A stretch of 64,000 nt of DNA from Paramoeba atlantica (lineage: Eukaryota; Protista; Discosea). The stretch's first letter is position 1; each line of letters opens with the position of its first letter. The stretch lies in contig CDRNVI010000083.1 of the NCBI GenBank assembly GCA_977017575.1, forward strand, positions 186,001-250,000, written 5' to 3'. Of this stretch, positions 4,666 through 25,583 are shown piece by piece. The notes under the pieces are model-generated. The model did not search any database. It saw only the letters and a program-made list of their open reading frames with translations, and was not told where the DNA came from. The translations under genes and the position numbers were made by a program.

Positions 4666-5391
4666 TTAAACGAAGTCCCCCACTAGTCTAGTAGGAACCT
4701 TTCTCGAATAATATTTTCCAAAAGTGCGACGAAATCCTGTGGCCTTCAAAATTTCCACATATGATTCCGAAAAGTTTATCCACTCCACATTGGGAGGTAA
4801 CAAGGAAAGTTCCACACATCCGTGCACGGCGTTATAAGATAAATCTATTGCTGTTAAAGAGTTAGGCATGCTACAGAAGTCCAACAACCCAGAAAACCGA
4901 TTCTGCTCCAAACGAAGCTCGCGCAGTGTTGTCGGCAGAGTGGTAAAGTCCAACGAACCGGAAAAAAAGTTTATCTGAAGATCGAGAATTTCGAGTTTAT
5001 TGGGGAGACAAGTCAAATCAACTTTTCCACTAAATTTATTGTCCCCTAAATTCAAGACTCGTAGCTCTAAGGGCAGATCATCCCAAGAAACAATGCCGCA
5101 AAATGTGTTACACCAAAGGTTGACCTCTTGCGTAGTTGGTGGAAGTACTCCCCAGCGAAGTGATCCGCTCCAAGAACTTGAAGGCCAGTTAATGCAATTC
5201 ACGGTTTCGTTCACTACTTTTAATCCATACCAAAAACCCAATTCCGTATCCATTGTCCACGTGTCATGTTTCTTTACAAGGTCAGCGACAAATAACAACA
5301 TGTCATCTCTGTGAGAGAGACAATGACCGCGCACTCGAGCTGCTCTTACCGTATCAGCAGCGTAAAAGAGCATCAAAATCCCGAAGTACAT
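4666..5391 (-). CDS. Short LRR protein with N-terminal signal (family member 1)
   Basis: Repeats of LPxxLxxLxLxxNxFSGxxDLxx. The N-terminal AAD..ARVRG motif is shared with three other ORFs in the window. Confidence 0.85.
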   Translation of the reverse strand: MYFGILMLFYAADTVRAARVRGHCLSHRDDMLLFVADLVKKHDTWTMDTELGFWYGLKVVNETVNCINWPSSSWSGSLRWGVLPPTTQEVNLWCNTFCGIVSWDDLPLELRVLNLGDNKFSGKVDLTCLPNKLEILDLQINFFSGSLDFTTLPTTLRELRLEQNRFSGLLDFCSMPNSLTAIDLSYNAVHGCVELSLLPPNVEWINFSESYVEILKATGFRRTFGKYYSRKVPTRLVGDFV

Positions 5392-5732
5392 AAAAAGAAA
5401 TTATCTTAATTCTAAAATAACTTGCAGACCTCACTACTGCAACTGCAAACACGTAGGACGAGCGGTAATACAACCCCGTTCATCAAAAATGGGACTAACC
5501 TTTAGAGAGCTACGCGTCTTGTTTTTTGATAATTTTTTTCAGGCTTCCTCACATTACTACAGAGAAGACCGCAAAAATTGTGTCGAAAGGCGCAAAAGAC
5601 TAATATTTTAATTATTTGTATTTTATCCTCTTTTTTGTGCATTTAATGTGACTTTTGGAGTTTTCGTAAGAATTATTGAGAAAATTTAACCAGTTTTTAA
5701 CATTACTCCCGATCTTTTTCCTTTAACGACAT

Positions 5733-6383
5733 ATGAATTCTAGCGATAGCGAAGAGCTGTCGAGCGGGGTCACTCTTTCGGATGAAAATGATTCTGATTG
5801 GAACCCATCAGATGAAATGGAATCAGATTTCTCTGAATCACAAGAATCGTCTTCTTTTTCGTCGAATGGTTCGTGTGCTTCTCTAGGATATGATTCGCCG
5901 CACGACGACGTACGTGTATTGTCTAGTTTATCCAGCTACTCAACTTCCAGTGGCTCGGAATCTTCGTATTCTTCTTCTTCGGAATCTTCGTATTCTTCTT
6001 CGGAATCTTCGTATTCTTCTGCTAGCGAAAGTAACGTTTCCTCCCCTCTCCCACTTTCCCCTCTCTTACTTTCTCCTGCACGCCGTGTTTGCTCTTCGAC
6101 CCGCTCTCGCATTCCATCTTTTTCACCAGACCGTTTTCAAAGAAGTGGATCGTTGTCTCCAGGATTTGATGCCAAGCTGTTGGAAGCGATACGTGATATT
6201 AAGGACGTTCACTCCGATATATCCCACCCAGCTGTTGACAACACCTTCTCTAATAGTTTACCCCCTGAAATGGAAGAACCAGATTCCAAACAACCAACCA
6301 ATCAGTTAATTCCAGATCCAAGAGATGATCAATTAAAATCTTTGGAGAAAAAAAATCTTATGATATTTTTAGACCATTGCTAA
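5733..6383 (+). other. Ser/Asp-rich low-complexity ORF at the edge of a repeat island, possibly transposon-derived
   Basis: Opposite strand to the host genes. Contains three tandem copies of TCGGAATCTTCGTATTCTTCT; no recognisable domain. Confidence 0.25.
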
Positions 6384-7827
6384 AAATTATACTCAGAAAA
6401 GTTCATTTTTTAAAGGGAATTTTGACTTTTCAGGGTACTTTTTAAGGTAATATTATATATTTGTTTTGTCTACAAGTATTTTTCCGGTGGTACCCTCAAC
6501 TAGATCTGCACGAATACACCGTTCTTTTGCCCTTTCTCTCATATACATGAATGTGGGGATAGTCCCAAAACCACTGGAACGGGGTTGTAGTAGTCTTTCA
6601 TAAGTAATTGAGGGGCTGCGGGTGGGGATTCGGTGCGGTCTCTGTGCGGTGTACCTACTTACAGTGGTTTCAATTGAACTTCCCCCCCGCGGAAGTTTTA
6701 GTTTTTTTGTCCGTTTTTCCTCATTTTTGTTGCGAATGAGAGATCTCGTTCCCCTAGTGAAGCGCTTTGGCACCTTTTTTCCACAGAGACCCCCTAGTGC
6801 TCGTATAGTGACCTGAAAAATAGTCAAAACAATATTTTTGATAAATACGAACCTTGGAAGGTAGTACAAAACCATGTACAAGGGTGTACAGAAATCTTGC
6901 CCCCCCCCCCCGCGGAAATTTGATTTTTTTTATCCGTTCGGGTAAAAACAAGATTTTAGAAAACTCATATTTTGAAACTTACGTGAGAAAATCCAGAAAA
7001 TGACGATCAGTACGTACTAATACGTGATTTAAGCTTTGTAGAATAGTACTCAGAATGTCCGTTGTCGCTTTTTAATACTATTCTGAGTCGTTTGAGGACT
7101 GAGCTAATTTGTCTTGTTTTCATAGTTCCACAAAATGAAAAAAATGTACGTGAGGGTGAAAATTTGCTAAAAATAATGTTTTTTATCCCATGAGATCTCT
7201 AAGGAGTCATTAAGAAGGAAATACAGCAAGACTATTCGCTATGAGAACGAGACCCATGAAACGCGATTAAAACGAGCCAAAATGCGAAGGAAATGATCTC
7301 ATAAAACATAAAAAAATACAAAAAAAGGGATGTGCTCCTGAAAAATACTATCAAAAAACCATGTTTTTTGGACCCAAGGGGTCCCAAGGGGTCGCTATGA
7401 AAAAAAGGCGGCAAAGCGCTTCGCTGGAAAGCGAGATCTCTCCAATGCTGCAAAGATGAGCAAAAACGGATAAAAAAATCAAAATTCCGAGGGGGGGGGG
7501 GCAAGATTTCTGTTCACCCCTGTATTTTGGACCCAGGGGGTATCTACAAAAAAAAGCAGCAAAGCGCCACCAGGGAAACGAGATCTCTCCAATGCTGCGA
7601 AAATGAGAAAAAAACTCAAAATTACGCGGGGGGAAGATATCTTGAAACCACTGTATCTCAGTGCAAGTACAGTAAATTACTGTGCGAAGTGTAGAATGGG
7701 CGGGGTGGCAGGGACGTAGAAGGTGAAGGCGAGGCTTCATGAATCCTGACTTCGTTGGAGAACAAATCTCAATGAAATTTACGGTTAGTAACAAATCACG
7801 AATGATTTTTCTTGAGATTATTATTAT

Positions 7828-8300
7828 CATTGCGGTGGCTGTGTAACTACCGCTCTACCCTCGATTATTGAAAAAAAAGTAATCAAAAACAATGAAAATA
7901 TAAAAAAGAACATCCCGAAAGGAAAACTTTTGGGATGACCCAAAAATAAATTATTTTTGACCAAAAAAACGTAAAACTACTATTTTTCCACAATCGATTA
8001 CTATTACGTATTTTGGGAGTTTGGGACCTCAGTTACCATTCTACGACGTTTGTTTCGACAGATTCGCCTCCTACCCCTACTGGTATAAAAAACGACCCGA
8101 ATTTGGGGTAAAATTTCGCAATTTTCCCCTAAAAAAGTTGTTCATTCATGGTGGTTTGGTAATTTTTCTTTTTTAGTGCGTTCGTTAAGCGCTGAGGTAG
8201 TTTTCAACGCGAAGCGCGCAGCATGAATGAATTCTACGTTGAAAACAACCACCGCGTTTGACGAAGAACCTAAAAAATCATTGCGGTGGTTGTATAACTA
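7828..8300 (+). repeat. Hairpin-bounded dispersed element (HINE/Helentron-like), one copy plus head of a second
   Basis: Starts CATTGCGGTGGCTGTGTAACTACCGC, ends in a long palindrome ...GTTGAAAACAACCACCGCGTTTGACGAAGAACCT-A6, followed directly by another head at 8279. Confidence 0.75.
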
Positions 8301-9656
8301 CTGCCCCCCCCACTTAAACGCAACCAGGTTTTGGCCTAAAATTGCGCATAAGTAGCCAGGTCAAAAAAAGGGGTGAAAAACTTTTTCGCGCCGATTCGCG
8401 GCGCGTGTTTCTATCATGAATTATATACGCAGGGTACCCTTCCGTGCTGCTTTTTATATACATGAGGCGCTGCGGGTGTGCATCACCGAACCGGCACCTT
8501 TTCGTCGAACCTTTTGAGGTCGAACGAGGTCTATTTTAGCCCAAAAAATGGATTGTACACGTACAAAGTAGCTTAAAGTGTAGTTTTTTTAGTTTGTTAC
8601 CGTACATAGCCGCCTTACTGTGAAAATACGGTGTACGCTGTATACGGTGCTGTATACGAACGGTGTATGCATTACACAAATCAAATGTACAATTAATATA
8701 CCCTCCACAATACATGCATAATTCTTTTACATTATCCTCCTTTTTATATGATGAGCCCTGTTGAGAGCAACGAAGATTTCACTTCACGTATGAAGGTAAC
8801 ATCTGCGAGGGATGATGACGTATACGACGTCATTGTCGCATCGCTTATGCGCACCTTCACGAAGCGCAAAACTCCTTTCGCAAAACTCCTTTATCGCGCA
8901 CGATGGACAGCTACTTACATGCCACACGCTCTGTGTGTGGCGTGGAGGTTAGCTCCCAAGTGCTGCAGCGTGTCATCTTCCACCTTGTGGAGCGCCGAGG
9001 ACACCTTCTCTTGGATTGTCTGCCACGAGGGGTCTACTTCCTTGCAGAGGCGACGCGTGATCTGGAAGCTTTCTTGGAACAGAACCCTCTCTACGCCCCT
9101 CCTCATGAAGGAGCTGTGGGGGAGTTCGTGGAGAACGTGTGGCGTTCTGTTTCAGAAAAGCGTTCCAGATCATGTACTCTGTGGCGCAAACGGAAGAGTG
9201 GCTAGGGTAAAGAAAACGTAGCAGAGGAATCCCTTTCTTCTACGGTGATCTCTTCACCCAACTTGCGCACTCAACCTTCCTCGCTCCCTCAACCTTCGCT
9301 TGGGGAAGCCTCTTTGAGGCCACGTTCCTCTCGCGTGATGCGCTTTCCTTCCCTTTAGTTTTCCCTCGCAGAAGCGAACGTTTCCCCCACAAAGCGTACG
9401 TAAGAGAAAAAGAGTTGTAATTCAAGAGAAGTGATAAGCTCGTTTTTTTTGAAGTTTGAAGTGCTAACCTTTATATATCATTTTTTTTAGATATCATGCA
9501 TATTGTATCATGAATAAGTTAGGTATCTTACCCATGAATGTCATCTTATATGTATCATGAATAAGTTAGGTATCTTACCCATGAATGTCATCTTACTTTT
9601 TGTTTTCTCTCTAGGCGATATTTTATCCTGCAATTCTATTTATCCTGCATTCTATC

Positions 9657-10273
9657 ATGTACGGCATTACCAGACAGCAATTCACAGATTTTTTTCTTGA
9701 GCTACAGAGAGCAAGTCCTCTTGTCGCCACGGACACTGATCTCAGACGCCTTAGCTCTTCCTTAGCTACGTGCGCTTTGAACTGCACATGGGAGAAACTG
9801 TATGATTTACAGCCCATGTGGATTGCTCCCGAAACTCCTCCTCTATCCATCAGGACTCTCCGCGATGACTTTAGCCGCATCGCTGATCTTTGCCGCTCTC
9901 CTGCTTTAATGAATCCGAAACTTCGTTTCAAGCATGGGGTATCTTGGATGCCTGACGTGACATGTATGATGGACGTCACGACAATGCGACAATTACACTT
10001 GCCGGAGTCCCTATTTTTTTTCGCGGACCCGTTCCGGGCAGTGTACATGATGCGAAAATTTATAAAGAAAGAACCACGCACGGAACATTTCTTTTTGACC
10101 ATCATGAAGATGAAATATTTTTGGCGGATCTAGGATACGTGGGTTGCAACCACTGTTTTGTTCCATTCAAGGCACCACGCAAAGGTTGCCTTGATGAACA
10201 CCAGGATCGGTTCAACCGCATGCATTCTTGGATTCGTTCAAGAATCGAGCGTTGTTTTGCTCATTTCGATTGA
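9657..10273 (+). pseudogene. PIF/Harbinger (IS5-like, DDE_Tnp_4) transposase, internally deleted and frameshifted
   Basis: CMMDVTT (D1) in one frame; GPVPGSVHD, FLADLGY (D2) and RSRIERCFA (E) in the next frame. The segment normally between D1 and GSxHD is missing. Confidence 0.8.
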
Positions 10274-11796
10274 TGAACGGAGGGATTGTCTCAAAGAACA
10301 CATATACGATGTGGGATATGTTCCCAAGAAACCACAGCATGGATCAAAAACTAAATAAAATTAAGTATCTAGTCGTTTTCCATGAATTGCGAAATGTAAA
10401 CTACGTAGTCATATCGTATACATGGCTTATAAATTTTTGTTATTATCGTATATTATGTACACTATGTATGTCACACATTATGATTTCTCCTTCGATCTAA
10501 CTATTTTTCTCCTTCAATGTCTGCCGCTCCGACTAATTTCGCATGCTTTCAGAGGATTTTTTTTCCAACCCGCGCCGAACCCGCGACCCGCAGCCCCTCA
10601 CATGTACTATCCCCCCCTAGCAATTCGCCTGCTGCTTTTTGCCTTGCTCCCACTTCTTCCTCTACGGCCCTCCAAAGTTGATATCAAAAGCGATGTCCCA
10701 TTCTTCTGACACGGGTCGTTGCATGTATAAGAATGATTTATGTGGCGCGATAGTGTCTGAGGTACATGAATGGGTTGGAACCAAAATTCGGCCATTCCAA
10801 AAGCCAAAGTTTCGAATGTATTCCGCGTGAACTTAGAAGAAGTTTTTATCAAGGGTCGTCAAGGTAACTGCGATAAAGACAGCAAGGAAGCCTGGAAAAC
10901 AAACTTAGCTTCATAAAGGGTGATGAGTATTATATGCTAATTGTTGAAGATTTTTGTCACAGACAAAGCAGGAATGAGATCCTGGCCTCTATCTACCCCC
11001 GTTCACCCTGTTTTGCCCGGCATTATGTACCTCGAAAAAATGATTGAAACTGTGTAAAAAGTGGTTATTCGGCGTTTCTAGGAAGACTTCTACTCAGGAA
11101 AAATCTTTTTTTCCATGACAACCCCATTGTACTCGTTTGCGAGGGGGCGTAACTTTCAATTTTTTTTGGCATGCAGTGCAGTTTTTTTCTATCTTCGTTT
11201 CAAGACGTTTGACTTTTCTTGACAAACGTCGAATTTTTTTCACATCTGCATATTTTCTTTGCGTGTTATGTTGCGGAGCCTTGTGAAAGTCAAGCGACCC
11301 ACTTGCCTCTGAAGCAGGAATTGGATCAATACTGCCCTCTCCCACGCGGGTTCCGACTGAAGTGGTGATAATCGGTTTATCGTAGTCGGAGAGCTCACCG
11401 ACAGCAATCACACCGGCGATTTCCTTTTCCACGCGGGTTGCAACTGATGTTGTAATTCTCGGGGTCGTACAGCCTACAGTCAGAAGCCTCATTCTGTGTA
11501 ACCTGTGGGGCATCATACCCGTCTACATCAAGACGCGTGAGTTTTCCATTCAGAAGGCGGATTAGACCATCCTCTGGATGATACATTGGTCAATTGGCGT
11601 ACGAAATAAAGTTTTATAGCAAAAAAATGCGGAAATCTAGAAAAATACGAAATGTGAACGTAGAAACATGGATAAAAATCACGTATATTCTAGCTGCATT
11701 AATGTGAATAATGAACTAAAACGCATTTTTCTAAGGTGCACAACGGACGTCCATGTCGTATCGCGAAGGAATTAGTTAAAAAGCTCGGCACGCGCA

Positions 11797-11883
11797 CCCT
11801 TATAACGCATATTGTAACCTGATAACGCATATTGTACCCTTTATAATGCATATTGTAACCTTTATAATGCATATTGTAACCTT
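11797..11883. repeat. About 20-21-bp minisatellite (core ATAA[CT]GCATATTGTAACC), 4 copies
   Basis: Direct reading. Related arrays at 12280-12412, 12805-12885 (reverse) and 52830-52920. Confidence 0.85.
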
Positions 11884-12280
11884 TATTGCGGTGGTTGTAA
11901 AACTACCGCTCTACACTCAATTATTGAAAAAAAAGTGAACAAAAACAGTGAAAATATAAAGAAGAACACAGTAATATAATAGAAGAAAAAAATATTAAAG
12001 GGGGCTCCGGTGGTCCAAAACTGAAAAAAAAAAATTGAAAAAAATGGGGGGTCCATGGGGGGGGGTCCAGGGGGTGGTCCAGGGGGGGGTCATGGTCGAG
12101 CAATTTTTTTCGAAAAAATTAGTTTTCGAAAAAAAAACGCAGAAAGGGTAGCCGGGGTCTTGGCGAGCATTTTCCACCCCCCTACTTTCGCTTTTCCGCC
12201 CCCCTACAACGCGAAGCGCGCAGCATGAGTGACTTCTAAGTTGAAAACAACCACCGCGTTTAACGAAGAGCTTAAAAAAT
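11884..12280 (+). repeat. Hairpin-bounded dispersed element (HINE-like), internally deleted copy
   Basis: Head TATTGCGGTGGTTGTAAAACTACCGC, GGGGGGTCCA repeats, right half of the terminal palindrome. Confidence 0.8.
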
Positions 12281-13953
12281 AATGCATATTGTCCCACTGA
12301 TAATGCATAAAACTCACACCCTTATAATGCATAGAAACTCGCACCCTTATAATGCATATTGTAACCTGATAACGCATAATGTAACCTAATAACGCATAAT
12401 GTAACCTGATTGCAAAAATATGGTGGAAATGCTGGGCTTCGTAAATTGCTTGGGTGTGGTGGAAAAGTTGGGCTTCGCAAATTGCTTCCCACTAACGTCA
12501 GACTCAGTGGCCCGGCCGGCCCCTCCGTGCGTTCGGCCTCTCATATTCCCCAAAACAACTACCACCTTCCCCCCACTCATCAGGGGTCGCTCGCGCGACC
12601 CCCGCTAAATAGGGGGGAAGGTGGTAGTTGTGGGGTATGGAGGCCTCTCGCAACTCCGGGGCCTCACCGGGAGCAGGAATGAAATACTAGCGCTCTTTAA
12701 CTTATTTCTCCTCTCCACTTTTTTTTTCTTTTTAACTTATTTCTCCCCTCCACTTTTTTTGTGGGGTCGTTTTTTCGAGGGGGTGGGCCACTTTTTTTTA
12801 AGGGCTCGCAAAAAACATGCATTATAAGGGTGCGAGTTTTATGCGTTATAAGGGTGCGAGTTTTATGCGTTATAAAGGTGCGAGTGGCCTCCCACGAGCC
12901 GCTCAATCAATTGCGGGCAATAAATGTGAACGGGGGTGTATGCATGCGAATGCATGCATAGATAGAATGGCCTATCTATGCATGCGAAGGGCAAAAGTAA
13001 ACATTACTCCGTCCTTGTAGAAGAGAGAACCCCACATCTAGGCGGCGCGCTGGTGCACTGATCATTTCGAAAGCGTACAGTACGTAGCAGGAGAGTTTCT
13101 CTGATGTACAGTATGCAAAGACTCGCCGTACAGATCGGTGGATGTCAGTGTGGATCAGAGTTCTCTAGAGATCGATGAAGATAATTCTCGAACGCCCCAA
13201 AGGGACTACCTGCAGATTCTCCATTTCAACAGCGGCGAAAATCTGTACAAAAATTCGTCCCAAAAAAAATCCTGCCCATACGAGGGAGGGCCACCCCCGG
13301 GTATGGGGGTGGAAAATACGCGCCAAGGCCCCGGCTACCCCTTCTGAGGGTTTTTTTGGTACCGCCGCGGTGTACGGGGATAGCTGGGAGGGGGGTTCAA
13401 GGGGGTAGGGACAAAAAAAAGTTTTTTTTTCGAAAAATAATATTTTTCAAAAAACATTTCGTGCGGTATGCCCCCCTGGACACCCCCCCCTAGACCCCTC
13501 ATTAGACCGCCCATTTTTTATTCAGTTTTTAATCAGTGATCGAGAAGTCACGGAAAAATACAACAATCATAGTTTCGCGCAACTTGAGGCCTACCCACTT
13601 GCGTAAACGGTCATAAGTGGGTGAAGAAGAGCTAGCATACTTGTCTTCAAGGAACACAGTGTGGTCAGGTGGAAGATCCATAAAAGGATTTGTAAGGTTA
13701 AAGTAAATTTTGGAACTATTTTTTTAGGATACATTTTGACTACATTTCATCAAAATTTCACTTCACTAAAAGTAACGGGAACGTGTACCTCTCAAAATTC
13801 AGAACTGGTAAGAGGGTATATAAAATTGTTCAACTCCTGAATATCTAGGAGTGATCTTTTTCGGGGCACTGTATTTTTACTTTGAGCCGCACCCGACCGC
13901 ACCCGGACGCACCCGCTCGCACCGAGCCCGGTTCACCCCTCTTAATTTAAAAG

Positions 13954-14441
13954 AAAACTACGAAGTTCATTGTCTTGGACTTGTGGAGAGACCATATTCA
14001 GGATGCAACTGTACTCACGTGCACTTAGAAATACGATCAAAGATATGTCCTTAAAAAATCGAATAAGAATATGAATACTCAAAAACAAACAGCGATACAG
14101 AAGAACTATGCTACAGATCATTGATCTGTATGATATTCCGCTAAGGGACCCAAATAAGCGTTTTTGACACGTTTTCAGAAGAATAAATAAGAAAGAATTG
14201 TCAAAAAAGTCGGGAGAACAGAGAAAGTTGGCCGAAAAAGCTTATCCCACCAGTAAAGAGAAAAAAAACTACGAAATTAATTATCTTGGACTTGTGGAGA
14301 GACCATACTCAGGATGCAACTGTGCTCACGCGCACTTAGAAATACGATCAAAGATATGTCCTTTGAAAAATCAAATAAGAATATGAATACTCAAAACTAA
14401 AGTGATATGGGAGAACTATGGTACAGTTCAATGATCTGTAT
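13954..14441. repeat. Two about 178-bp direct repeats (13954-14132, 14265-14441)
   Basis: Near-identical blocks ...TCTTGGACTTGTGGAGAGACCATA.TCAGGATGCAACTGT.CTCACG.GCACTTAGAAATACGATCAAAGATATGTCC... Confidence 0.85.
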
Positions 14442-14850
14442 AAATTTCCGCCCACGGAACTGTATAGCTTTCAAAACGACTGTGTATTCCTATGAGACGA
14501 CGCTGAGCAAGAAAAATTTCAAAATCATTTTCTCGTAATGGTACATAAAAAACGAGATCTTATTCATTCATATTTTCATGTTTTTTTTATATTGACATTA
14601 AGGAACAACATAAAGATCACATAGCAACATGATATGGATTACTATGCTACAGATAAAAATATCTGCTATGATTGAAGATTGGAACGCTTCTATTAATTCG
14701 TACTAGACAAATCGGAGCAAGAACAAGTAATTTCCAATATAAAATCCCAATATAAAATATAAATTCCAATATAAAAGGATTTCTGATTTCGCCAGCACAT
14801 TGTCGTCCATTTCATTGTTATTTAATTCAAGACAAATATTTGAGCGATAT

Positions 14851-16392
14851 TTAAAGTTCTGAGACAGGTTTTTCCAAAAGTTTAGCATGCAAACCATCTC
14901 CGGCGTGCACTGCCAATGTCCGTAGAGCAAATTCTGGTCCCTGTTGAGCATTAAGACAGAACATGGCGGTTCCCTGTTCCACCCATTGCAGCTGCCCTTT
15001 GAGAGACACGCAACGAGCCTCCACGTCGGAGTATCCCCAAGCCACTGGGTAGGATATCTCTATCACGTCAAATTCCGGTACCCATAAGAATGAGGGAATG
15101 TGCGGGCTTTCGATCTCTGCTTTAGCGGCGGCAACGTGTGCTGATATTGTGTTACCCCCGAACCGGGCCCCCACGTTTATAGCATAGAGAGAGCGAAATA
15201 GGGGGAAGACATTCTGACATGCAGCAAGGGTTTGTAACGAGAGCTCTTCCCGAAGGCAAAGGTAGACGTAACCCGCGCACAGGGCATCGTATCCTGCCTC
15301 ATGGGCAAGAGCCCCATAGAGAGTCTTCCCCGCCGCCTTCATGCGAAGAGCCTCAGCGTACCGATCGAATCCAAGAGGAAAAGTAACATTGGCCATCTTT
15401 TTTTGTGTGCTATCCATGTAGTACTCTGCAACCATTTGAAGCCCCCGGGAGCGAAATTTGGATTCCCAGTCCGGTATGTAGGAAGCTAAAAGTCGAGTGT
15501 CGTAGATATGCGGAAAATAACGCTGCATGAGAATGGCAAAATCTTGGCTCTTTTTGGGAAGATCCGCATCCATAGCCGCAATGAGAAATAAGTAGTCACT
15601 TAGACAGTGATGCCCGATGACAGGCTTTTTGGAGGCTACCATCAAGTTGAACACTTTACGAAATCCTACGAAGTCGAGTATTTGCGACTCCACCTGTTCC
15701 GCTGCGGCCTCTTGCGAAGTCTTCCCTCGGACCACCAACGAGAGACGTCCACGGTTGGTGAAGGTAAGCTCCAGGTCTCGGAGCTGGGATTGGACAAAGA
15801 GTCGTACCCGACGCTCTGCTTTCTGAGGCAAGACGTACTCGGAGGAACCATTCTTGTCGGCGTACCACTCTTTCACTTTACGTTCAAGTTCCGCAGCTAC
15901 TTTCTTATCGATAGGGTCAGTGAGTTGACTTGTCGGTGCGGGAGCCGTGAATTGCTCTAGTTTGCGTGCTCGATAGCGGTCTTCCTGTGCTGCATTGCAA
16001 TACCCGACCCCTTCGTAGAACCACTTTTGAAAATCCATTTGGTTGCGCTTGTTAAATGAAATTCCATCTGGCTCCAGCACCAGAGTTCTTCCGGGACAAA
16101 GTCGCTCGTCGCTGCTTGGAAAAACGAAAAAGTTAAACGGTCGGGCAACGTACCGTGGTCCTGGGCCGGAGTTTTCCTGAAACAAACATATACCGAATTG
16201 AATAAAACTGTAAGTCTCCGCCACACGGCATTTCTTTTCAAAAGCAACCTCAGGCTCATCGCATACATGTCCCCGTGATGAAGGAATTTCGATTCCAGTC
16301 ATTTCGCCATCGATCGCATAAAATTCGCACTGTTCAAGGAGATTACCGAATTCCGGAAGGACGGAGGGGAAATTAGCCTTAGTGACGTTCAT
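14851..16392 (-). CDS. PARN: Poly(A)-specific ribonuclease (CAF1/DEDD family)
   Basis: MNVTKANF..., AIDGEMTGI, FQFGICLF, FNFFVFP, IGHHCLSD, DTRLL and AHEAGYDA. Confidence 0.92.
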   Translation of the reverse strand: MNVTKANFPSVLPEFGNLLEQCEFYAIDGEMTGIEIPSSRGHVCDEPEVAFEKKCRVAETYSFIQFGICLFQENSGPGPRYVARPFNFFVFPSSDERLCPGRTLVLEPDGISFNKRNQMDFQKWFYEGVGYCNAAQEDRYRARKLEQFTAPAPTSQLTDPIDKKVAAELERKVKEWYADKNGSSEYVLPQKAERRVRLFVQSQLRDLELTFTNRGRLSLVVRGKTSQEAAAEQVESQILDFVGFRKVFNLMVASKKPVIGHHCLSDYLFLIAAMDADLPKKSQDFAILMQRYFPHIYDTRLLASYIPDWESKFRSRGLQMVAEYYMDSTQKKMANVTFPLGFDRYAEALRMKAAGKTLYGALAHEAGYDALCAGYVYLCLREELSLQTLAACQNVFPLFRSLYAINVGARFGGNTISAHVAAAKAEIESPHIPSFLWVPEFDVIEISYPVAWGYSDVEARCVSLKGQLQWVEQGTAMFCLNAQQGPEFALRTLAVHAGDGLHAKLLEKPVSEL

Positions 16393-16653
16393 AAGGGTTT
16401 AATCAAGTTTCGATGAAAATAGTTAGATAGAAAATTAAGAAATCGTTAGGAGTTGGAAATCAAAATCTACAAAATAGATATTTTATTTAGAAAAATGCAT
16501 CATATTTGTTCGGATACGTTGATAACCCTATAGGTAATGGGGCTCAACAACATTGTGCATATTAAAATTTAATGTGCAGTATGCAGGTAGGGAATTAAAG
16601 TTAAGGGGAAACGAAAAAAATAAGAAAGAATATAAGGGGCATTGATTGTGACC

Positions 16654-16939
16654 TCACAGGAACTCAGCCTGCTCCCCACATGAATGCGAAGAACACACGA
16701 AGAGGGTCACTGCACATAGATGTCTTTGTTGCAAAGCCTGCAAAACGCCGTTTTTAAGCCAATTAATAAAGAGTTTGCATTCCTCTGATGTGCCAATTAG
16801 GGAATGTATTTTAAAGCCGTTTGCAGTATGAACCGTCAAAAAAATTTCTTTCATATGCCACGGTTGAAACACCGAACCTCAATAGATTCCGTTCGAGTAC
16901 AGTGCTATCACTAGCATCAATGAGTTTTCTGCGATTCAT
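16654..16939 (-). pseudogene. HOP1/HORMAD-like HORMA-domain fragment, frameshifted and truncated
   Basis: From ATG 16939: ...STVLERNLLRFGVSTVAYERNFFDGSYCKRL*, then a frame change to GFKIHSL...EECKLFINWLKNGVLQALQQRHL...*. Both pieces resemble the Hop1 HORMA N-terminus (RNLLR...Y.R..F; W...GV..AL...L). Confidence 0.6.
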
Positions 16940-17279
16940 CGAAACATATCCTTATGCACATCTGGCTCCTGCAAAATTTTATTGATATACTGAAGTTCCA
17001 AGTACATACCCCTGCCGGGTAAATGGGTAATTACCCGCATGGTGGTAAACAAGGGTAATTTACCCGGGTCATTGACCCATTTACCCGCTTTCACCCTGAT
17101 TTGCCAACCAATCATACGATCCCGTACTACAATGAAGCTCGATGAGTGTGCCAACTTTGCTGAGCAAGTTGTCGCTACAGAAACAGTATCTCAATCCATA
17201 GAGGGAAAAATCCATCCTACATCCGGTTTCCCCCTTTTTCTATCCCCTAAACCAAACAACCTTTTTTTTTTGCATTTTT

Positions 17280-18215
17280 TTTAAAAACGAACTCGTGCGA
17301 GGCGGAGTGGAACAGAATCAGGGACCCGATACCCCGTACTCTGCACGACAATCGCTTCTTCTCCATTCAAGTAATCTCTCCGCAACCACACTTCCTCTCT
17401 TCATGCCCACAGAATCTCGTGTTTGTCCCGTGGACGGATGCACTTGAAGTACAACGTCCCATGGAGCGCAGTGGCAGGCCTTCTACAATCACGTCGCCCT
17501 CCGACACGGTGACGCGGGAACAGTGGTGGGATGAACAAGGTCACTGCCTCTGCAGGTCATGTAGAAAAAATTACGTATGTGGAAAAAAAATGTTTCAAAG
17601 CAGGTCTCACACCTTGAAACGTGCAAATTCCGAAATCACGCCTCTCCTCACCCCACTGACCCCTCCCAGTCGCCAGCACTTAAATGTGCAGCACTTAAAC
17701 TGCGAGCGCAAGCCATCATTCGCGGCACACAATACGGCGTCGCGATTCCTGCAGGGTCGGAACGGCTCAGACTTTAGAGTCTATCTGGCTTGGTGAATAT
17801 TCCGTTCCACGGATTTTGACACATCCCAATAACTCAGCGCACGGGTTCTGGGATAACGATGTCCTTACAATCGTGGACACCGTTCCTGTTTACCCTCACG
17901 ACACTCGCGAACATGATTATGGTAGTCATTTTTGAATCGGCAATGCAATTGAAACGTGCAACCCTATGTAGTGCACACAAAGTGTATTTTTTGTTTAAGG
18001 GCGTCTGTGAGAATATCCGCATGTTCATGTGGACAGTTTGGCGGGCAACGAGCCAAATTGAAATGTCCAGACAAAGACTTCGCCGTCATCTTGTGCCGCT
18101 CGTTCCGCTTTGATCGCTTTGGGTCCGGGACCACTATCTCACCTTCAGAGCTTGATTCAGATGAAGAGAGCGGTTCGGGCGCCCTGATTGTCGATGATCT
18201 TCGTTTGGACATGTA
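17280..18215 (-). pseudogene. Degenerate Cys/His-rich reading frame downstream of a HINE-like palindrome
   Basis: ATG near 18215: MSKRRSS...CPPNCPH...VCTT*GCTFQLHCRFKNDYHNHVREC..., with several in-frame stops; family not recognised. Confidence 0.25.
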
Positions 18216-19081
18216 ATTTCCTTTTTTAGGCTTTTCGTTAAACGCAGTGGTTGTTTTCAACTTAGAAGTCACTCATGCTGCGCGCTTCGCGTTGAAAACT
18301 ACCACCGCGTTTAACGAAGAGCCTAAAAAAGGAAAATTAGCCAGGGACGCTGAAGAAAACGGAAGGATTTGAGCCAAAAATAGCCGATTTTTAGGTAAGA
18401 ATGGGGTGCTTTTTGGGTATTTTTGCTCTCAGAGCACTGCATCCGACATTTACGCGTGGGAAATCACTCATAGGCATGTATTCGAGGTTACATAACATAT
18501 TGGGTAGAGAATGCGACTCCAACCACACTATTCTTTCGACACAAAAAGGCCCCTTGGGATCCGAAAAATACTTTTTCACCTTTTTTAGTCAAAAATGGGT
18601 CATTTTGGTAGGCGTACCATGGCTTCAAGAAGCGACATCTCGCGAAAACAATGGCGTGGAAAGCTAGAATAGGTCCCAAACTATCAAACTATCAAAATAC
18701 AATAGGGGAAACAATTTTGTAAAAATACTTTTTTTACCATTTTTTTCGTCAAGTTGAAAAGTTTTTCAAAAAAAAATTCCGAAAAAATCCGAACTTGTCG
18801 GACCCATCCTGCGCATACGAGGGGGGGGTCACCCCCTGGTAGGGGGGTGGAAAATTATTTTTTCGAAAAATATTTTTTTCAAAAAAAATTCGTGCGGTAT
18901 GCACCCCCCCTGGACCCCCCAAGGGCCCAATTTTTTTAGAAATTTTTTGGACTACCGGAGCCCCTTTTATATATTTTTCTTCTATTATATTACTGTGTTC
19001 CTTATTATATTTTCACTGTTTTTGTTCACTTTTTTTTCAATAGTCGAGGGTAGAGCGGTACTTATACAACAACCGCAATAA
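18215..19081 (-). repeat. Hairpin-bounded dispersed element (HINE-like), longest copy (about 0.86 kb)
   Basis: Reverse complement of 58984-59828. Complete palindrome of about 130 bp at about 18215-18345. Confidence 0.85.
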
Positions 19082-19801: not shown

Positions 19802-20443
19802 GAGGGGTGACTCCTGCCCAGGCGCTCCTAGGCGCTCCCAGTAAACTTCTACGGAGATCCGACTTGGTGAAATGATGTTCGCAAAGAGGTCCGGAATCCT
19901 CAATGTCCCTTGGATGGAACATGCTGGGCTAACATGACAAAGAGTTAGAAAGGGAGACCGGCGTTGGGCTGTCGTCGGTGATGGGGCGTGTCGACTCCAG
20001 CCTTCCGAAGTAAGAAATTCCAGCTAGCTGCAGCCCGCCGGTTGGACAGTCTTAACGTTAGGTGTATTGCGGTGGTTGTTTAACTACCATTGTACCATCG
20101 ATTATTGAAAAAAAAAGTGAACAAATTTTCCATCCCCACGTGGGGTTGACCCCCCCCCCCTGGTATCCGCCAGATGGGTCCGCCGAGTTCGGAATTTTGA
20201 CGAAAAAAAGTTGAAAAACATCCTAGGCGGGATCCTAGGCGCTCCCACCCAGAGTCATCCCTCTAAGCACAATGTATTATTAACGTGTATTACATACCGA
20301 AACCCTCGTTTAAGCTCTGCAAAATAACAATTCCCGTAACATGATTTCTGCATTTTCAGATTGAAACAAAAAAATATTAAGAAACTAAAGAAGAAAATTT
20401 TGACGAAAGATATCCTAGGCGCTCCCACCCAGAGTCACCCCTC
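19802..20443. mobile_element. Tourist-like MITE (PIF/Harbinger-type ends)
   Basis: 12-bp TIR GAGGGGTGACTC / GAGTCACCCCTC with TAA on both sides; a second right-end copy at 20252-20263 is also followed by TAA; contains a HINE-like head at 20065. Confidence 0.7.
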
Positions 20444-20924
20444 TAAGTGTCCCAATGGTGCTTAATATTCCTATGTATGATATCATACGCTCGAGGCGCA
20501 GAGATACGTCTCTCTGTGTGACGGCCAATACCATCGACGCATGACCCGCATACGACGGGTGTCACACAGAGAGTGGAGTGCGAGGTAGGAGACGAGTCGC
20601 CCATCGGTCATGCTACAGCACGTATAGCCATGGTTCATGCTGCAACACAGTCAAGCCGTGGGTTCATGCTGTCAGATGGTCTATCGTGGATCATGATGCA
20701 TCATAGGGAGGTCCGTTACCGCCGCACTCGCTACAGCATGTAGGGAGAGAGGGGTGCAAGTTCGCATCCCCTATACACGCATAGAACGTGTCCTCCCGCT
20801 GTAGAACGCCCAGTGGCCCTCAAGGGAGGCCACCATGGCGCATAGCTCCCGGGAAGAGACAGACGCGAGAAGAAGAGAGCCGGGGAGGGAAGCCCGGATG
20901 TTCAACTCCAGTGCACCACCCCAT

Positions 20925-22309
20925 TGTCAACTCCAGCGCACCACTTTTTTCACCATAGTCGACCGTCATTCCTTTTTTCTGCGCCTCACCATAGTTGAAC
21001 ATCGTTCCTTTTTCCTTTCAACATAAAAACTTATCCAGAGTATTTAAAGAAAGTGTAATACAAGTGTAAGATCTGAGTAAGAAACTTTATTAGACAAGAA
21101 TTTCTTCACCTTTACAAAATGCTTAAATTTAATGTCATTAAATTTCCAATACTAGCAGACTAACTTTACAAGCTTTCTCACGTACCTTTGCTTACTTAGC
21201 TTCTTTTACTTACGCAGTTCATTCACAAAATCCATTGGAGAACGATAATTTAATAATTTCCGAGGACGAGTGTTCAATTCCAATGCTGTTTTGTTTAATT
21301 CACTTTGGTTCAAATTCTCAAAAGATTCGGTTTTCTGATGGAATTGTCGGATCAAACCGTTTGCATGTTCCACAGACCCTTTCTCCCACGAATGATATGG
21401 AGCGCAAAAGAAAGACTTGCATTTTAATTTTTTGTTTACTTCTTCATGGTGCCAGAATTCTGTTCCGTTGTCGTATGTGATTGTTTGAACCTTGTAATTC
21501 TTTAACCCGTCTACAATTTGTTTGCTTACCCCCTTCGCGTGCTTAGATTCCAACTTGCGAAGAACAAGGAAGCGACTCTTACGCTCGCACAGGGTAAGAA
21601 TATATCCGGTATGTCCTCGACCCTCGACCAAGTCTGCTTCCCAATCGCCGTAGCGCCGACGCTTATTAACAATTTCTGGTCGATTTTCAAGTGGCGTTCG
21701 GTTGGGAATCGCGCTGCGATCAGGTCTGGTGCGACGACGGTATGGCCTCTTTCGCCGGATCCGCAAATGGGTGTACAACTTGCCGCCTAAGGACGCGTTG
21801 CGACGAATATGGCGATATATGGTAGAAGTCGAGGCGGTACGACAGCTACGGATCGTATTTGCAATCTGTTCCGGGCTGTGCTTCTTTTGAAGTCGAGAGC
21901 TGACTTCCTCTTCCAAAAGGCCTTGTATCTTGTGAGGCTTGACCTTTTTACACGAGAGGCGTCTTTTCGAAATGCGCTGTGCCCTCGTCCCCTCATAGCG
22001 CTGACCCCTTCTTGCATTACGCGCCAACTCGCGACAAACAGTGCTGTGACTTTTGCCAATTATGCGAGCTATGCTTCGCCGACTCTCGCCAGATGTAAAG
22101 AGTGATTGAATACGATTACGATCGTAATGACTGAGTCTTGAATAACGGCGCATTTGTAGTGTAGATCCGAAGGATATTATAAAATAATTCTTCTTTAAAT
22201 AATTGATGGTGCATTGGAAATGAGAATACAGTTTTTAAGAAAAAGTGGTGCACTGGAAATGACAAGAAAATTATTTTTTGGGAAAAAAAGTGGTGCGTTG
22301 GTGTTGACA
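20925..22309 (-). mobile_element. IS30-family insertion sequence (1385 bp)
   Basis: 26-bp TIRs TGTCAACTCCAGCGCACCACTTTTTT (20925-20950) and 22284-22309 match at 24/26; 2-bp flanking duplication AT; single transposase ORF. Confidence 0.9.
21206..22153 (-). CDS. IS30-family transposase, intact (315 aa)
   Basis: N-terminal HTH (SRRSIARIIGKSHSTVCREL), SPEQIA, STIYR, GDWEADLV (D), ITYDNGTEF (D), PYHSWEKGSVEHANGLIR (E; D-33-E spacing), LNTRPRKLLNYRSP. Confidence 0.95.
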   Translation of the reverse strand: MRRYSRLSHYDRNRIQSLFTSGESRRSIARIIGKSHSTVCRELARNARRGQRYEGTRAQRISKRRLSCKKVKPHKIQGLLEEEVSSRLQKKHSPEQIANTIRSCRTASTSTIYRHIRRNASLGGKLYTHLRIRRKRPYRRRTRPDRSAIPNRTPLENRPEIVNKRRRYGDWEADLVEGRGHTGYILTLCERKSRFLVLRKLESKHAKGVSKQIVDGLKNYKVQTITYDNGTEFWHHEEVNKKLKCKSFFCAPYHSWEKGSVEHANGLIRQFHQKTESFENLNQSELNKTALELNTRPRKLLNYRSPMDFVNELRK

Positions 22310-22737
22310 ATCCGCCAAGTAAACTCACTCGAGGAGTGAGCCGGGGAGGGGTGAAGAGTCGGAAGTACGTCCCCTACTTCCACGACAAAGAGGGACAGTT
22401 TCGGCCTTAGTGCCGGCCGGCAACGGGCATAAAAATACAGTAAGAGTATACCCGTTGCCGGGGAAACAAAGATGAACTAAGGAAAAAGTACCAACAAGGT
22501 ACAGAAGCTGCATCTTTATCTTCTCCTCTCCCCGACAACTACCGTGTCTTTGCTTGAGATCCACACAACTCACCCCTCGAAAATCCCCTTTTTGTATGAT
22601 TCTTTCATCAAAATAGCAAGCCCCAAGCACACACAAGACCCAAACGAGCACAAGATCAAAGATCGCGCCCCGTCGCGGCGCGAAAGATGTTTTGGCCCTT
22701 TTCTGCTAATTTTCTAATATTCCTATACCTCGTTATA

Positions 22738-24203: not shown

Positions 24204-25583
24204 TTATAGCATCACAAGACCTATCCGAGATGGAGGCAGTTGAGGCAGATGCCAGTTAAAAAGATAGTATTGAAGGTATCCATCACCCATTCCGAACTTG
24301 AGGTCTTCAAAAACTCTCGCATTATCCATCATATCAAGTGCGTTATACACATCACAACGCTCCTTAGAGGCTCGTATCAAAGCTTCCTGAAAAAGCTCTT
24401 TTAAACTCACTGTGTTCGCGACGTGGTAGTACGAATACGCCACGCGAAGCTCCTCATGTTTGGCATTCCCCGTAATGGTGCTGGGCAGGACATAAAAGCT
24501 CATCAGATCCGTGACCCCCTCCCCCGGTACTTCCCGTACGTACGTGTGTAACACATTACCCACAGGAAGCAGCCAGTGCGCGACCTCCTCTTCTGAGAAG
24601 TGTGGCGTGAGAGCGTACTTTTTTAAGTCATTCTGCAGCACCCGTTGAACAGCGCTAACATCACCCGGGCGCATTACCCGGAGATACGACACTGTCCCCT
24701 GTGCGGGGAGAGCATAATGTCGCCGTGTCATCCCCAGCGGGTTCTTAAACCGTTTCATAAAAGCCTCTGGAATCTTCGAGAACCCCACCTCCAGGAGTTT
24801 CTCCGGGTGCAGCGGTCGGTGCCAGTACCGACACTTGGCCACAGGTACCGTCAGGGGGGTACCGCTGGTGAATACGGCATAGAAAATACCCCGGTGGTTC
24901 ACACGCCGCGTGATCTCTTTGATAAGAATTGGTGCCAGTCGTTTCTCACGTAGTTTGTGGTGAATACACAGAAAGTTAATCTCCACTACGGTGTGGATGC
25001 GGTCCCCGAGCCGTACCGTACACGGCACCGCGGTGATACTCGCGAGCAGGGTGCCATCGAAGACACGACGTACCCCGATGTGCCAGCTGGGGTCATACCG
25101 CGGCGGGGTCAGCGCCCAGCGTAGGAACGCGGTGGGGTACTGAAACCGAAACATCGCGTCGTCGTCCTCCACGTAGTGGTGGAGCAGCAGCTCGTGTAGC
25201 TCAGAGAGGTGGGTGGGGTTGTGTACGACATCGAGTGTGCACCAGTGGAGGGTGTTGGCGAGGGGGTAGGGATCCGCGCGTAGGGCTGCGGGGTCGACGG
25301 TTCGCATAGGACCTTCGTGGGGAACAGCCTCGCCTGCGCGTGTCACGGGTTGGGTGTCCCAAAACAAGTGAGGTCGGCTGGAGTTTGCGGATTCAGTTTC
25401 CATGTTGTGTTTCTCAATCTCTTTTTTCTGTCGAGCCCATATGGAGGTATAGGTAGGTTCATCGGGGTGGGAACCTGTGGTGAGAAATTTTGTTTCTGGC
25501 TCGCTTGTTGATTGTTTTACGGTAAGGGATTCTAGAGGCAGAATTACGTTGGTAACGTCTTGTTTTTTCTCAGGTACACTCAT
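24204..25583 (-). CDS. NMT: Glycylpeptide N-myristoyltransferase
   Basis: HLFWDTQPV, HYVEDDDAMFRFQY, VEINFLCIHHKLREKRLAPILIKEITRR, KFGMGDG.LQYYLFNW. Confidence 0.97.
   Translation of the reverse strand: MSVPEKKQDVTNVILPLESLTVKQSTSEPETKFLTTGSHPDEPTYTSIWARQKKEIEKHNMETESANSSRPHLFWDTQPVTRAGEAVPHEGPMRTVDPAALRADPYPLANTLHWCTLDVVHNPTHLSELHELLLHHYVEDDDAMFRFQYPTAFLRWALTPPRYDPSWHIGVRRVFDGTLLASITAVPCTVRLGDRIHTVVEINFLCIHHKLREKRLAPILIKEITRRVNHRGIFYAVFTSGTPLTVPVAKCRYWHRPLHPEKLLEVGFSKIPEAFMKRFKNPLGMTRRHYALPAQGTVSYLRVMRPGDVSAVQRVLQNDLKKYALTPHFSEEEVAHWLLPVGNVLHTYVREVPGEGVTDLMSFYVLPSTITGNAKHEELRVAYSYYHVANTVSLKELFQEALIRASKERCDVYNALDMMDNARVFEDLKFGMGDGYLQYYLFNWHLPQLPPSRIGLVML

What the first reader, a model, noticed from the sequence alone, without database searches (positions are those of the whole stretch)
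20925..22309. Intact bacterial-type IS30 transposon embedded in a eukaryotic (kinetoplastid-like) chromosome
Seen: complete 315-aa DD33E IS30 transposase, 26-bp TIRs (24/26), 2-bp AT duplication, flanked by this window's own repeat families. No Shine-Dalgarno is visible before the ATG. The ORF is co-oriented with the host polycistronic strand and preceded on that strand by pyrimidine tracts and AG dinucleotides (e.g. TTTTCTTGTCATTTCCAG at about 22270-22253, though an out-of-frame ATG follows that AG; another AG lies near 22193). Knowledge: IS30 is a prokaryotic family. Eukaryotic offshoots are known for IS630, IS5, IS256, IS1595, IS3 and IS481, but I know of no established eukaryotic IS30 lineage. 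Inference: a horizontally acquired IS30 that may be expressed through SL trans-splicing, possibly a new eukaryotic superfamily.
Basis: partly seen in the sequence, partly recalled or inferred. Interest (0 to 1): 0.9.

Follow-up and report, generated by a model that had tools for sequence, protein, structure and literature searches.

The report
IS30-type transposon living in a kinetoplastid genome
A small jumping gene of a kind known only from bacteria (IS30 family) is integrated in the nuclear genome of a kinetoplastid-like protist, where it has multiplied and split into subfamilies, which would make it a new bacteria-to-eukaryote transposon lineage.

Summary
The ORF is real: 315 aa, an IS30-family transposase (NCBIfam NF033563, 245 bits against a cut-off of 80; D174-D228-E262).

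**True ends.** Four copies, the window's and three on other contigs of ENA assembly ERZ24900291, place the element at 20893-22316 (1424 bp). Each copy has its own 3-bp target duplication: CTT, CCT, GAT, TTT.

**Host and integration.**
- The host is eukaryotic and kinetoplastid-like.
- All four copies lie among eukaryotic genes.
- Contig depth of the element core is about 7-9 times single-copy depth in two runs whose depths differ 20-fold.
- An uninterrupted copy of the flanking host repeat runs straight through the insertion point.

Contamination and chimera are therefore rejected.

**Origin.** The nearest prokaryotic relatives are Verrucomicrobiota IS30 elements at only 42-49% identity. They share the end tip GGCGGATT and 3-bp duplications. 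Six transposases from the protist fall into three subfamilies and form one clade (100/100).

**Reading.** An old transfer from bacteria, diversification inside the eukaryote, and recent jumping: two copies differ by 2 nt, and pN/pS is 0.16.

**Untested.** Expression by SL trans-splicing could not be tested.

**Prior notes.** No paper found describes a eukaryotic IS30 lineage. First-stage notes already flag IS30-type genes on at least 8 other pieces of this genome.

The parts
20890..20892 (-). Target-site duplication, copy beside the right (3') end. It reads CTT on the minus strand and AAG on the plus strand.
   Evidence: The four copies carry matching flanking triplets CTT, CCT, GAT and TTT. 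The read laying joint 20889->22317 skips 1427 nt with 3 shared letters. An uninterrupted paralogue in L087 has a single AAG at this point.
20893..22316 (-). Whole IS30-family element, 1424 bp. If the duplication is 2 bp rather than 3 bp, the element is 1425 bp and ends at 22317.
   Evidence: Homology among the four copies stops exactly here. The left tip GGCGGATT is identical to the tip of the Verrucomicrobiota relative L030.
22290..22316 (-). Left terminal inverted repeat, 27 nt, beginning GGCGGATTGTCAAC.
   Evidence: The tip is shared with the bacterial relatives L030 and L089.
22201..22265 (-). Two further direct copies of the end motif inside the left arm (22240-22265 and 22201-22226). The second overlaps a pyrimidine tract followed by AG.
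   Evidence: the repeat finder family D1; motif scan.
21206..22153 (-). Transposase ORF, 315 aa: N-terminal HTH followed by a DDE core (D174, D228, E262).
   Evidence: An identical protein is encoded in L003 and a 98% identical one in L001.
20950..21016 (+). Two direct copies of a second 31-nt motif in the 3' non-coding arm (20950-20980 and 20986-21016).
   Evidence: the repeat finder family D3. The motif is conserved in all four copies.
20924..20944 (+). Inner copy of the end motif at the right arm.
   Evidence: It matches the left repeat better than the true terminus does, but it lies 31 bp inside the element.
20893..20919 (+). True right terminal inverted repeat. It reads CCCGGATGTTCAAC inward from the end and matches the left repeat at 20 of 27 positions.
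   Evidence: In run X2 a diverged copy's contig also starts at 20895 (table 8).
22317..22319 (-). Target-site duplication, copy beside the left (5') end (CTT on the minus strand).
20813..20889 (.). Host high-copy repeat interrupted by the insertion, low-coordinate half. The high-coordinate half continues at 22320-22400.
   Evidence: Contig depth is 1,000-11,700 against 58 for single-copy DNA. L087 3466-3697 is an 88% identical uninterrupted paralogue.

Best explanation
This is an autonomous DNA transposon of the IS30 family that lives in the nuclear genome of a kinetoplastid-like protist.

Shown:
- The 1424-bp element encodes one 315-aa HTH + DD(33)E transposase.
- It ends in imperfect 27-nt inverted repeats and is flanked by a 3-bp target duplication.
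- Near-identical copies sit at four or more different eukaryotic loci, each with its own duplication, so the element has transposed inside this genome, and recently.

Inferred:
- An IS30 from a bacterial lineage related to those now found in Verrucomicrobiota entered an ancestor of this protist once.
- It then diversified into at least three subfamilies.
- Along the way it lost the ribosome-binding site and gained longer non-coding arms carrying two or three tandem copies of the end motif. These copies probably act as extra transposase-binding sites.

Inferred from the IS30 prototype, not shown here:
- The transposase binds the end motifs through its N-terminal HTH.
- It joins the two ends into a circular or dimer junction and inserts the junction with a 3-bp staggered cut.

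Not shown:
- How the gene is transcribed in this host. Read-through polycistronic transcription with SL trans-splicing is possible for sense-oriented copies such as this one.
For: - **Family:** NF033563 scores 245 bits against a cut-off of 80. HTH_38 and rve domains are present. The DDE residues are aligned with bacterial relatives.
- **Ends and duplications:** four-copy alignments define both.
- **Empty site:** the read laying joint skips 1427 nt with 3 shared letters. The uninterrupted repeat paralogue in L087 passes through the insertion point.
- **Eukaryotic context:** NMT, CAF1, MTR4, CNNM, TIP41 and DnaJ lie in the window. Piwi/PAZ, uS13, cobW and LRR genes lie beside the other copies. 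The uS13 on IS-bearing contig L003 scores 213-218 bits against Leishmania and Trypanosoma ribosome chains, 181 for the next best and 176 for Euglena.
- **Stoichiometry:** core depth over single-copy depth is 393-476 / 57.9 in X1 and 20-25 / 2.7 in X2, about 7-9 fold in both.
- **No bacterial twin:** the best non-self hits among 5.8 billion protein clusters are 49% identical or less. The best match in bacterial and archaeal genomes is 42-47% over the full length, in Verrucomicrobiota.
- **One clade:** six sequences from this protist are monophyletic at 100/100. They sit inside a 62-row clade (100/99) dominated by Verrucomicrobiota.
- **Shared end tips and 3-bp duplications with bacterial relatives:**
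- **Shared end-motif architecture in subfamily C:**
- **Recent activity and constraint:** the window and L003 copies differ at 2 of 1425 nt. Window against L001 shows 9 synonymous and 5 non-synonymous changes, pN/pS 0.16, binomial p = 9e-4.
Against: - Both junctions of this particular copy lie in high-copy repeats. No independent contig was shown to bridge them: ERZ24900291 contigs L004 and L090 stop at about 18478 and about 23550.
- ERZ24900291 and runs X1-X3 may come from the same culture and the same reads as the window, so support from different loci is not support from independent samples.
- There is no RNA evidence at all.
- One of the four copies (L005) is frameshifted, and the subfamily B copy in L002 is truncated before the catalytic E.
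- No second eukaryotic species carrying the lineage was found.
- The donor is unidentified. The sister relation to the bacterial clade is weakly resolved (78/79).
- The organism's name is coded. 'Kinetoplastid' rests on one ribosomal protein, on gene organisation, and on unchecked first-stage notes about spliced leaders.
Confidence: 0.8

Rival explanations
1. Assembly chimera or contamination: a bacterial IS from a food or co-cultured bacterium was stitched into a eukaryotic contig.
For: Free-living kinetoplastids are grown on bacteria. The junctions lie in repeats, where assemblers err. No independent contig bridging this copy's junctions was seen.
Against: Four copies at different eukaryotic loci each carry a clean 3-bp duplication. 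The depth ratio to single-copy host DNA is constant in runs that differ 20-fold in depth. An uninterrupted paralogue matches the predicted empty site. No prokaryotic sequence is more than 49% identical.
Confidence: 0.03
2. Several independent, fairly recent transfers from related but unsampled bacteria, rather than one old transfer followed by diversification in the eukaryote.
For: The subfamilies are as far apart as 1.3 substitutions per site. Bacterial IS30 diversity is far from fully sampled. Only one host species is known.
Against: All six sequences form one clade at 100/100 on a long stem of 0.64. Subfamilies A and C share derived end features absent from the bacterial relatives examined: a GT insertion in the tip (GGATTGTCA) and tandem subterminal copies of the motif.
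Confidence: 0.12
3. A dead relic: the family transposed in the past but this copy no longer moves or is expressed.
For: There is no RNA evidence. One of four copies is frameshifted. Two of four lie antisense to their neighbours.
Against: The ORF is intact with all catalytic residues. Both ends and the duplication are intact. It differs at 2 of 1425 nt from a copy at another locus. The transposase shows purifying selection.
Confidence: 0.2
4. A domesticated transposase now serving as a host gene.
For: There is purifying selection on the ORF, and the ORF is co-oriented with host genes in this window.
Against: It is multi-copy, with terminal repeats and target duplications at every copy. The copies lie in different, non-syntenic contexts and in both orientations. 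Some copies are decaying.
Confidence: 0.02

Closest known systems
Prokaryotic IS30 family (prototype IS30 of E. coli; here the Verrucomicrobiota-associated subgroup, e.g. loci L022-L025, L030 and metagenomic L089)
   Same: Both have a single transposase of about 315 aa with an N-terminal HTH and a DD(33)E core, above the curated family cut-off. Both have terminal inverted repeats of about 27 nt with the same tip (GGYGGATT). Both make 3-bp target duplications.
   Different: - The host is a eukaryote.
- Protein identity is only 42-49%.
- The element is 1424 bp, against 1083-1216 bp in the three bacterial relatives measured.
- It has 164-nt and 313-nt non-coding arms carrying 2-3 tandem copies of the end motif.
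- It has no Shine-Dalgarno motif.
IS481EU of parabasalids (Kojima and Bao 2023, PMC10045372) and the other 'ISxEU' minor superfamilies (ISL2EU, IS3EU)
   Same: It is a eukaryotic cut-and-paste-type family that nests close to one prokaryotic IS family, is restricted to one protist group, and is explained by transfer from prokaryotes.
   Different: The parent family is different (IS30, not IS481, IS3 or IS5). The target duplication has a fixed short length. So far it is seen in one organism only.
IS607-like sequences in eukaryotes (Gilbert and Cordaux 2013, PMC3673617)
   Same: It is a prokaryotic IS family found integrated next to eukaryotic genes, with about 40-50% identity to the nearest bacterial copies.
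   Different: For IS607 no terminal repeats or target duplications could be found, so transposition in eukaryotes could not be concluded. Here the ends, the duplications and the empty site are all seen. That screen, which used all IS families against 430 eukaryote genomes, recovered no IS30.
Merlin (IS1595-related) in Bodo saltans and Perkinsela (Lopes et al. 2021, PMC8101967)
   Same: It is a DNA transposon with prokaryotic IS relatives in non-trypanosomatid kinetoplastids.
   Different: Merlin is an old, widespread eukaryotic superfamily, and those kinetoplastid copies looked inactive. This family is IS30-derived, multi-copy, and has near-identical copies.

Membership tests
IS30 family (ISfinder/NCBIfam sense) | The transposase scores above the curated cut-off of the family model. 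| tested here: met
   NF033563 scores 245.3 bits against a cut-off of 80, E 8.8e-73, covering profile positions 1-267 of 267. IS481 and IS21 models score far below their cut-offs.
IS30 family (ISfinder/NCBIfam sense) | [quoted passage not shown] | tested here: met
   D174 (GDWEAD), D228 (TYDNG), E262 (VEHANG) and R269 align with the bacterial relatives.
IS30 family (ISfinder/NCBIfam sense) | An N-terminal helix-turn-helix DNA-binding region. | tested here: met
   PF13936 HTH_38 at residues 3-46, E 1.1e-13, above its cut-off. A weak second HTH lies at 88-118.
IS30 family (ISfinder/NCBIfam sense) | Terminal inverted repeats of about 20-30 bp. | tested here: met
   The 27-nt ends match at 20 of 27 positions. 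The tip GGCGGATT is identical to that of bacterial relative L030.
IS30 family (ISfinder/NCBIfam sense) | A short (2-3 bp) target-site duplication. | tested here: met
   The four copies carry CTT, CCT, GAT and TTT. A 2-bp reading with a conserved T is not excluded. The relatives L022-L024 make 3-bp duplications.
IS30 family (ISfinder/NCBIfam sense) | A compact element of about 1.0-1.25 kb, almost filled by one ORF. | tested here: inconclusive
   There is one ORF, but the element is 1424 bp with 476 nt non-coding and repeated subterminal motifs. The relatives measured here are 1083-1216 bp.
IS30 family (ISfinder/NCBIfam sense) | Transposition through joined ends (circle or dimer with a short spacer). 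| not testable with these tools
   Only assembler contigs could be laid, and no end-to-end joint was listed.
IS30 family (ISfinder/NCBIfam sense) | A prokaryotic host. | tested here: not met
   All four copies lie among eukaryotic genes in a kinetoplastid-like genome.
New eukaryotic IS-like superfamily ('ISxEU' in the sense of Kojima and Bao 2023) | Eukaryotic copies form their own clade apart from the prokaryotic family members. | tested here: met
   Six sequences form one clade at 100/100 with a stem of 0.64.
New eukaryotic IS-like superfamily ('ISxEU' in the sense of Kojima and Bao 2023) | Several families with defined ends and target duplications in eukaryotic genomes. | tested here: inconclusive
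   Subfamily A is fully defined. Subfamily C has matching inverted repeats, but its duplications could not be read. Subfamily B has only a left end motif.
New eukaryotic IS-like superfamily ('ISxEU' in the sense of Kojima and Bao 2023) | Present in more than one eukaryotic species. | tested here: not met
   Every relative more than 50% identical comes from the single ENA assembly ERZ24900291. The searched collection also holds EukProt and MMETSP proteins, but it under-samples free-living kinetoplastids.

The most novel reading that the evidence does not exclude
This is the first member of a self-sustaining eukaryotic lineage of IS30-derived transposons (an 'IS30EU'). It would have been founded by one bacterium-to-kinetoplastid transfer, remodelled with multiple subterminal binding sites, and still be transposing. 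It would then be expressed from polycistronic transcripts by SL trans-splicing. A 315-aa transposase with 27-nt ends that works in a kinetoplastid nucleus would also be a candidate genetic tool.
Probability: 0.5. Interest if true: 0.8.

Novelty: new variant of a known kind. Interest (0 to 1): 0.72.

Why it matters
Links between prokaryotic IS families and eukaryotic transposon superfamilies are few: IS630, IS1595, IS256, IS5, IS1380, ISAzo13 and IS3/IS481. IS30 is not among them.

A systematic screen of all IS families in 430 eukaryotic genomes found only IS607, and it could not show transposition. Here the whole chain is visible in sequence: ends, target duplications, an empty site, near-identical copies, purifying selection and subfamily radiation.

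This would add a new case of a bacterial mobile element crossing into a eukaryote and persisting there. It also shows which features changed on the way:
- the ribosome-binding site was lost;
- the arms grew longer;
- the end motifs were multiplied.

It occurs in kinetoplastids, a group long thought to lack DNA transposons. Their promoter-poor, polycistronic transcription makes the question of how such an element is expressed directly testable.

Tried and rejected
- **RNA evidence.** The only RNA-labelled run (X5, 2015) covered neither the element nor the NMT control gene. It says nothing about expression or trans-splicing.
- **Independent confirmation of this copy's junctions.** ERZ24900291 contig L004 is 99.6% identical to window 4985-18478 but ends at 18478. 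Contig L090, which carries NMT, ends about 650 nt past the gene, near 23550. Neither reaches the element.
- **Spliced-leader search.** A conserved kinetoplastid SL core pattern, recalled from memory, had no match in the window or in the loci then held.
- **Rfam and tRNA scans of the window.** Nothing was found.
- **End-motif pattern scan of JGI metagenome contigs.** There were 55 single matches, none next to an IS30 transposase, so they are chance matches.
- **IMG/VR scan for a viral vector.** One distant relative (31% identity) was found. This gives no support for a viral route.
- **Non-autonomous copies in the window.** None were found.
- **Target duplications of subfamilies B and C.** They could not be read from the two copies of each.
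- **Naming the organism.** The NMT protein's best non-self hit is only 53% identical, in a prokinetoplastid culture transcriptome, clone PhF-6. Two recent free-living kinetoplastid papers do not mention transposons.
Rejected, as explained under the observation check.

Full report
**What is at the coordinates**

The minus strand of 21206-22153 carries an uninterrupted 315-aa ORF. It scores 245.3 bits on NCBIfam NF033563 (IS30 family transposase, cut-off 80). The IS481 and IS21 models fall far below their cut-offs. Pfam finds an N-terminal HTH_38 domain (residues 3-46) and an integrase core.

**The ends were misplaced**

The same element also occurs on three other contigs of ENA assembly ERZ24900291: L001, L003 and L005, at 97-99.9% identity.

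- In the four-copy alignments, homology begins at GGCGGATTGTCAAC on the left and ends at GTTGAACATCCGGG on the right. This corresponds to window 22316 down to 20893.
- Just outside these points each copy has its own direct repeat: CTT (window), CCT (L001), GAT (L003) and TTT (L005).
- The element is therefore 1424 bp with a 3-bp target duplication.
- A 2-bp duplication plus a conserved T cannot be excluded from these four sites alone.
- Two observations favour 3 bp. The Verrucomicrobiota relatives L022-L024 make 3-bp duplications (CTG, ATA, GTT). Relative L030 starts with the same GGCGGATT.

The right arm holds two tandem copies of the end motif. The outer copy (20893-20919) is the real terminus. 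The left arm holds three copies.

**Integration is real**

The window is eukaryotic. Intron-less ORFs lie almost all on the minus strand, and they encode N-myristoyltransferase, a CAF1 deadenylase, MTR4, CNNM, an HBS1/eRF3-like GTPase, TatD, TIP41, DnaJ and EMG1. The other copies lie beside Piwi/PAZ genes, uS13, cobW and LRR genes.

The uS13 on the IS-bearing contig L003 scores 213-218 bits against Leishmania and Trypanosoma ribosome chains. The next best eukaryote scores 181 and Euglena 176. With the gene organisation, this supports a kinetoplastid. First-stage notes on spliced-leader-capped retrocopies in the same genome point the same way, but I did not check them.

Laying Logan contigs of three DNA-like runs gave the following:

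| Run | Transposase-core depth | Single-copy NMT contig depth | Ratio |
|---|---|---|---|
| X1 | 393-476 | 57.9 | about 7-8 |
| X2 | 20-25 | 2.7 | about 7-9 |

The ratio is the same at 20-fold different depth. That is expected for a multi-copy resident of the same genome and not for a co-cultured bacterium.

The same call lists a joint from 20889 to 22317 that skips 1427 nt with three shared letters. This equals the element plus one duplication.

The flanks are a high-copy host repeat, with depth up to about 11,700. A copy of that repeat in L087 (3466-3697, 88% identical) runs uninterrupted through the insertion point with a single AAG. Chimera and contamination are therefore very unlikely.

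The caveat is that no independent contig was shown to bridge this copy's own junctions. ERZ24900291 contigs L004 and L090 break at about 18478 and about 23550, on either side of the repeat-rich stretch.

**Where it comes from**

Among 5.8 billion protein clusters, the only close relatives come from the same ENA assembly. All other hits are 49% identical or less. In one genome per bacterial and archaeal species, the best full-length matches are 42-47% identical and overwhelmingly from Verrucomicrobiota MAGs.

Searching with a second, 56-58% identical copy from L002 found two more divergent groups in the same assembly, in L086/L087 and L088.

In maximum-likelihood trees the six protist sequences form one clade (SH-aLRT 100 in the quick tree; 100/100 in the careful tree). 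The clade sits on a stem of 0.64 substitutions per site, inside a 62-row clade (100/99) dominated by Verrucomicrobiota. Its internal depth reaches 1.3 substitutions per site. Its sister relation to the bacterial rows is only weakly resolved (78/79).

The closest metagenomic relative (L089, 49%) is a compact 1083-bp IS. It has near-perfect 28-nt repeats starting GGTGGATTCAA and a GAGGAA ribosome-binding site. The four identical Verrucomicrobiota copies L022-L025 are 1214 bp.

The protist elements share the tip but have several differences:
- a GT insertion in the tip (GGATTGTCA);
- tandem subterminal copies of the motif, also present in subfamily C;
- non-coding arms of 164 and 313 nt;
- no ribosome-binding site.

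I read this as one old transfer from bacteria followed by diversification and remodelling in the eukaryote. Repeated transfers from unsampled donors are the main rival.

**Activity**

The window copy and L003 differ at 2 of 1425 positions, although they sit at different loci. Between the window and L001 the ORF has 9 synonymous and 5 non-synonymous differences. That gives pN/pS 0.16, with a binomial p of 9e-4 for such an excess of synonymous changes. Non-coding divergence is 3.1%. L005 has two frameshifting indels. The L002 copy of subfamily B is truncated before the catalytic E.

This mix of intact, constrained copies and decaying ones is the usual picture of a family that was active very recently. 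Present-day activity is not shown.

**Expression**

GC and GC3 of the ORF (both 46%) lie within the range of the window's host genes, whose GC3 runs from 39 to 69%.

The ORF here is sense to the surrounding gene array, and pyrimidine tracts followed by AG exist in the left arm. However, the L001 and L005 copies are antisense to their neighbours and L003 is ambiguous. Co-orientation is therefore not a family rule.

The single RNA-labelled run covered neither the element nor the control gene. Trans-splicing remains a hypothesis.

**Mechanism**

By analogy with the IS30 prototype (established knowledge, not tested here), the HTH region should bind the end motifs. The DDE core should then join the two ends into a junction and insert it with a short staggered cut. 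The 3-bp duplications fit that model. The extra subterminal motif copies probably serve as additional binding sites. That arrangement is commoner in eukaryotic transposons than in the bacterial relatives examined here.

**Literature**

Full-text searches found no eukaryotic IS30 lineage.
- Gilbert and Cordaux (PMC3673617) screened representatives of all IS families against 430 eukaryotic genomes. They recovered only IS607, without repeats or duplications.
- Kojima and Bao (PMC10045372) list the known IS-to-eukaryote links without IS30. They predict that further minor "ISxEU" superfamilies will appear.
- Lopes et al. (PMC8101967) reported Merlin as the first DNA transposon in kinetoplastids.

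The scan's own first-stage notes flag IS30-type transposases on at least eight other pieces of this genome. This agrees with the copy number and subfamilies found here, but the notes are not independent evidence.

**Verdict**

The core interpretation is supported and sharpened. This is a resident, diversified, recently mobile IS30-derived transposon family in a kinetoplastid-like genome. I class it as a new variant of a known kind.

The read-laying run used 5901 letters.

Noticed in passing
window 22364-22560 (also 20000-20196 and 20788-20984): This is a very high-copy host repeat. Summed contig depth is about 11,700 in X1 against 58 for single-copy DNA, roughly 200-fold. It contains a 15-nt hairpin (22417-22431 paired with 22447-22461). 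The IS30 element is inserted into a member of this repeat family.
   Followed up: partly
L003 16198-20470; L004 8206-8517; L087 1152-2111; L088 4146-4616; window 56560-57309: The same genome carries other DNA-transposon genes: Tc1/mariner-type (DDE_3, HTH_Tnp_Tc3_2), pogo-type (DDE_1), Harbinger-type (DDE_Tnp_4) and Merlin-type (DDE_Tnp_IS1595). This is unusual for kinetoplastids, where DNA transposons were first reported only in 2021.
   Followed up: no
L002 15474-20704: Reverse-transcriptase (RVT_1) ORFs of retroelements lie a few kb from the subfamily B IS30 copy.
   Followed up: no
L005 237-2983 and 13152-15499: Two Argonaute-type genes (PAZ + Piwi) flank a frameshifted IS30 copy on one contig. 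One appears split into three ORFs.
   Followed up: no
L086 5861-5943 versus L087 5916-5943: The number of tandem end-motif copies differs between two copies of subfamily C: three in L086 and one in L087 at the left arm. The subterminal repeats therefore expand or contract.
   Followed up: partly
window 20985-21181: The 3' non-coding arm of the element has about 2.5 times the contig depth of the transposase core in X1 (1135 against 393-480). This hints at non-autonomous derivatives or at arms shared between subfamilies.
   Followed up: no
L090 5125-6505 versus window 24204-25583: In ERZ24900291 the NMT gene is called as two ORFs (342 + 119 aa) on a 7-kb contig. In the window it is one 459-aa ORF. 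The ENA assembly is more fragmented and may carry indel errors or another haplotype. L004 is 99.6% identical to the window.
   Followed up: partly
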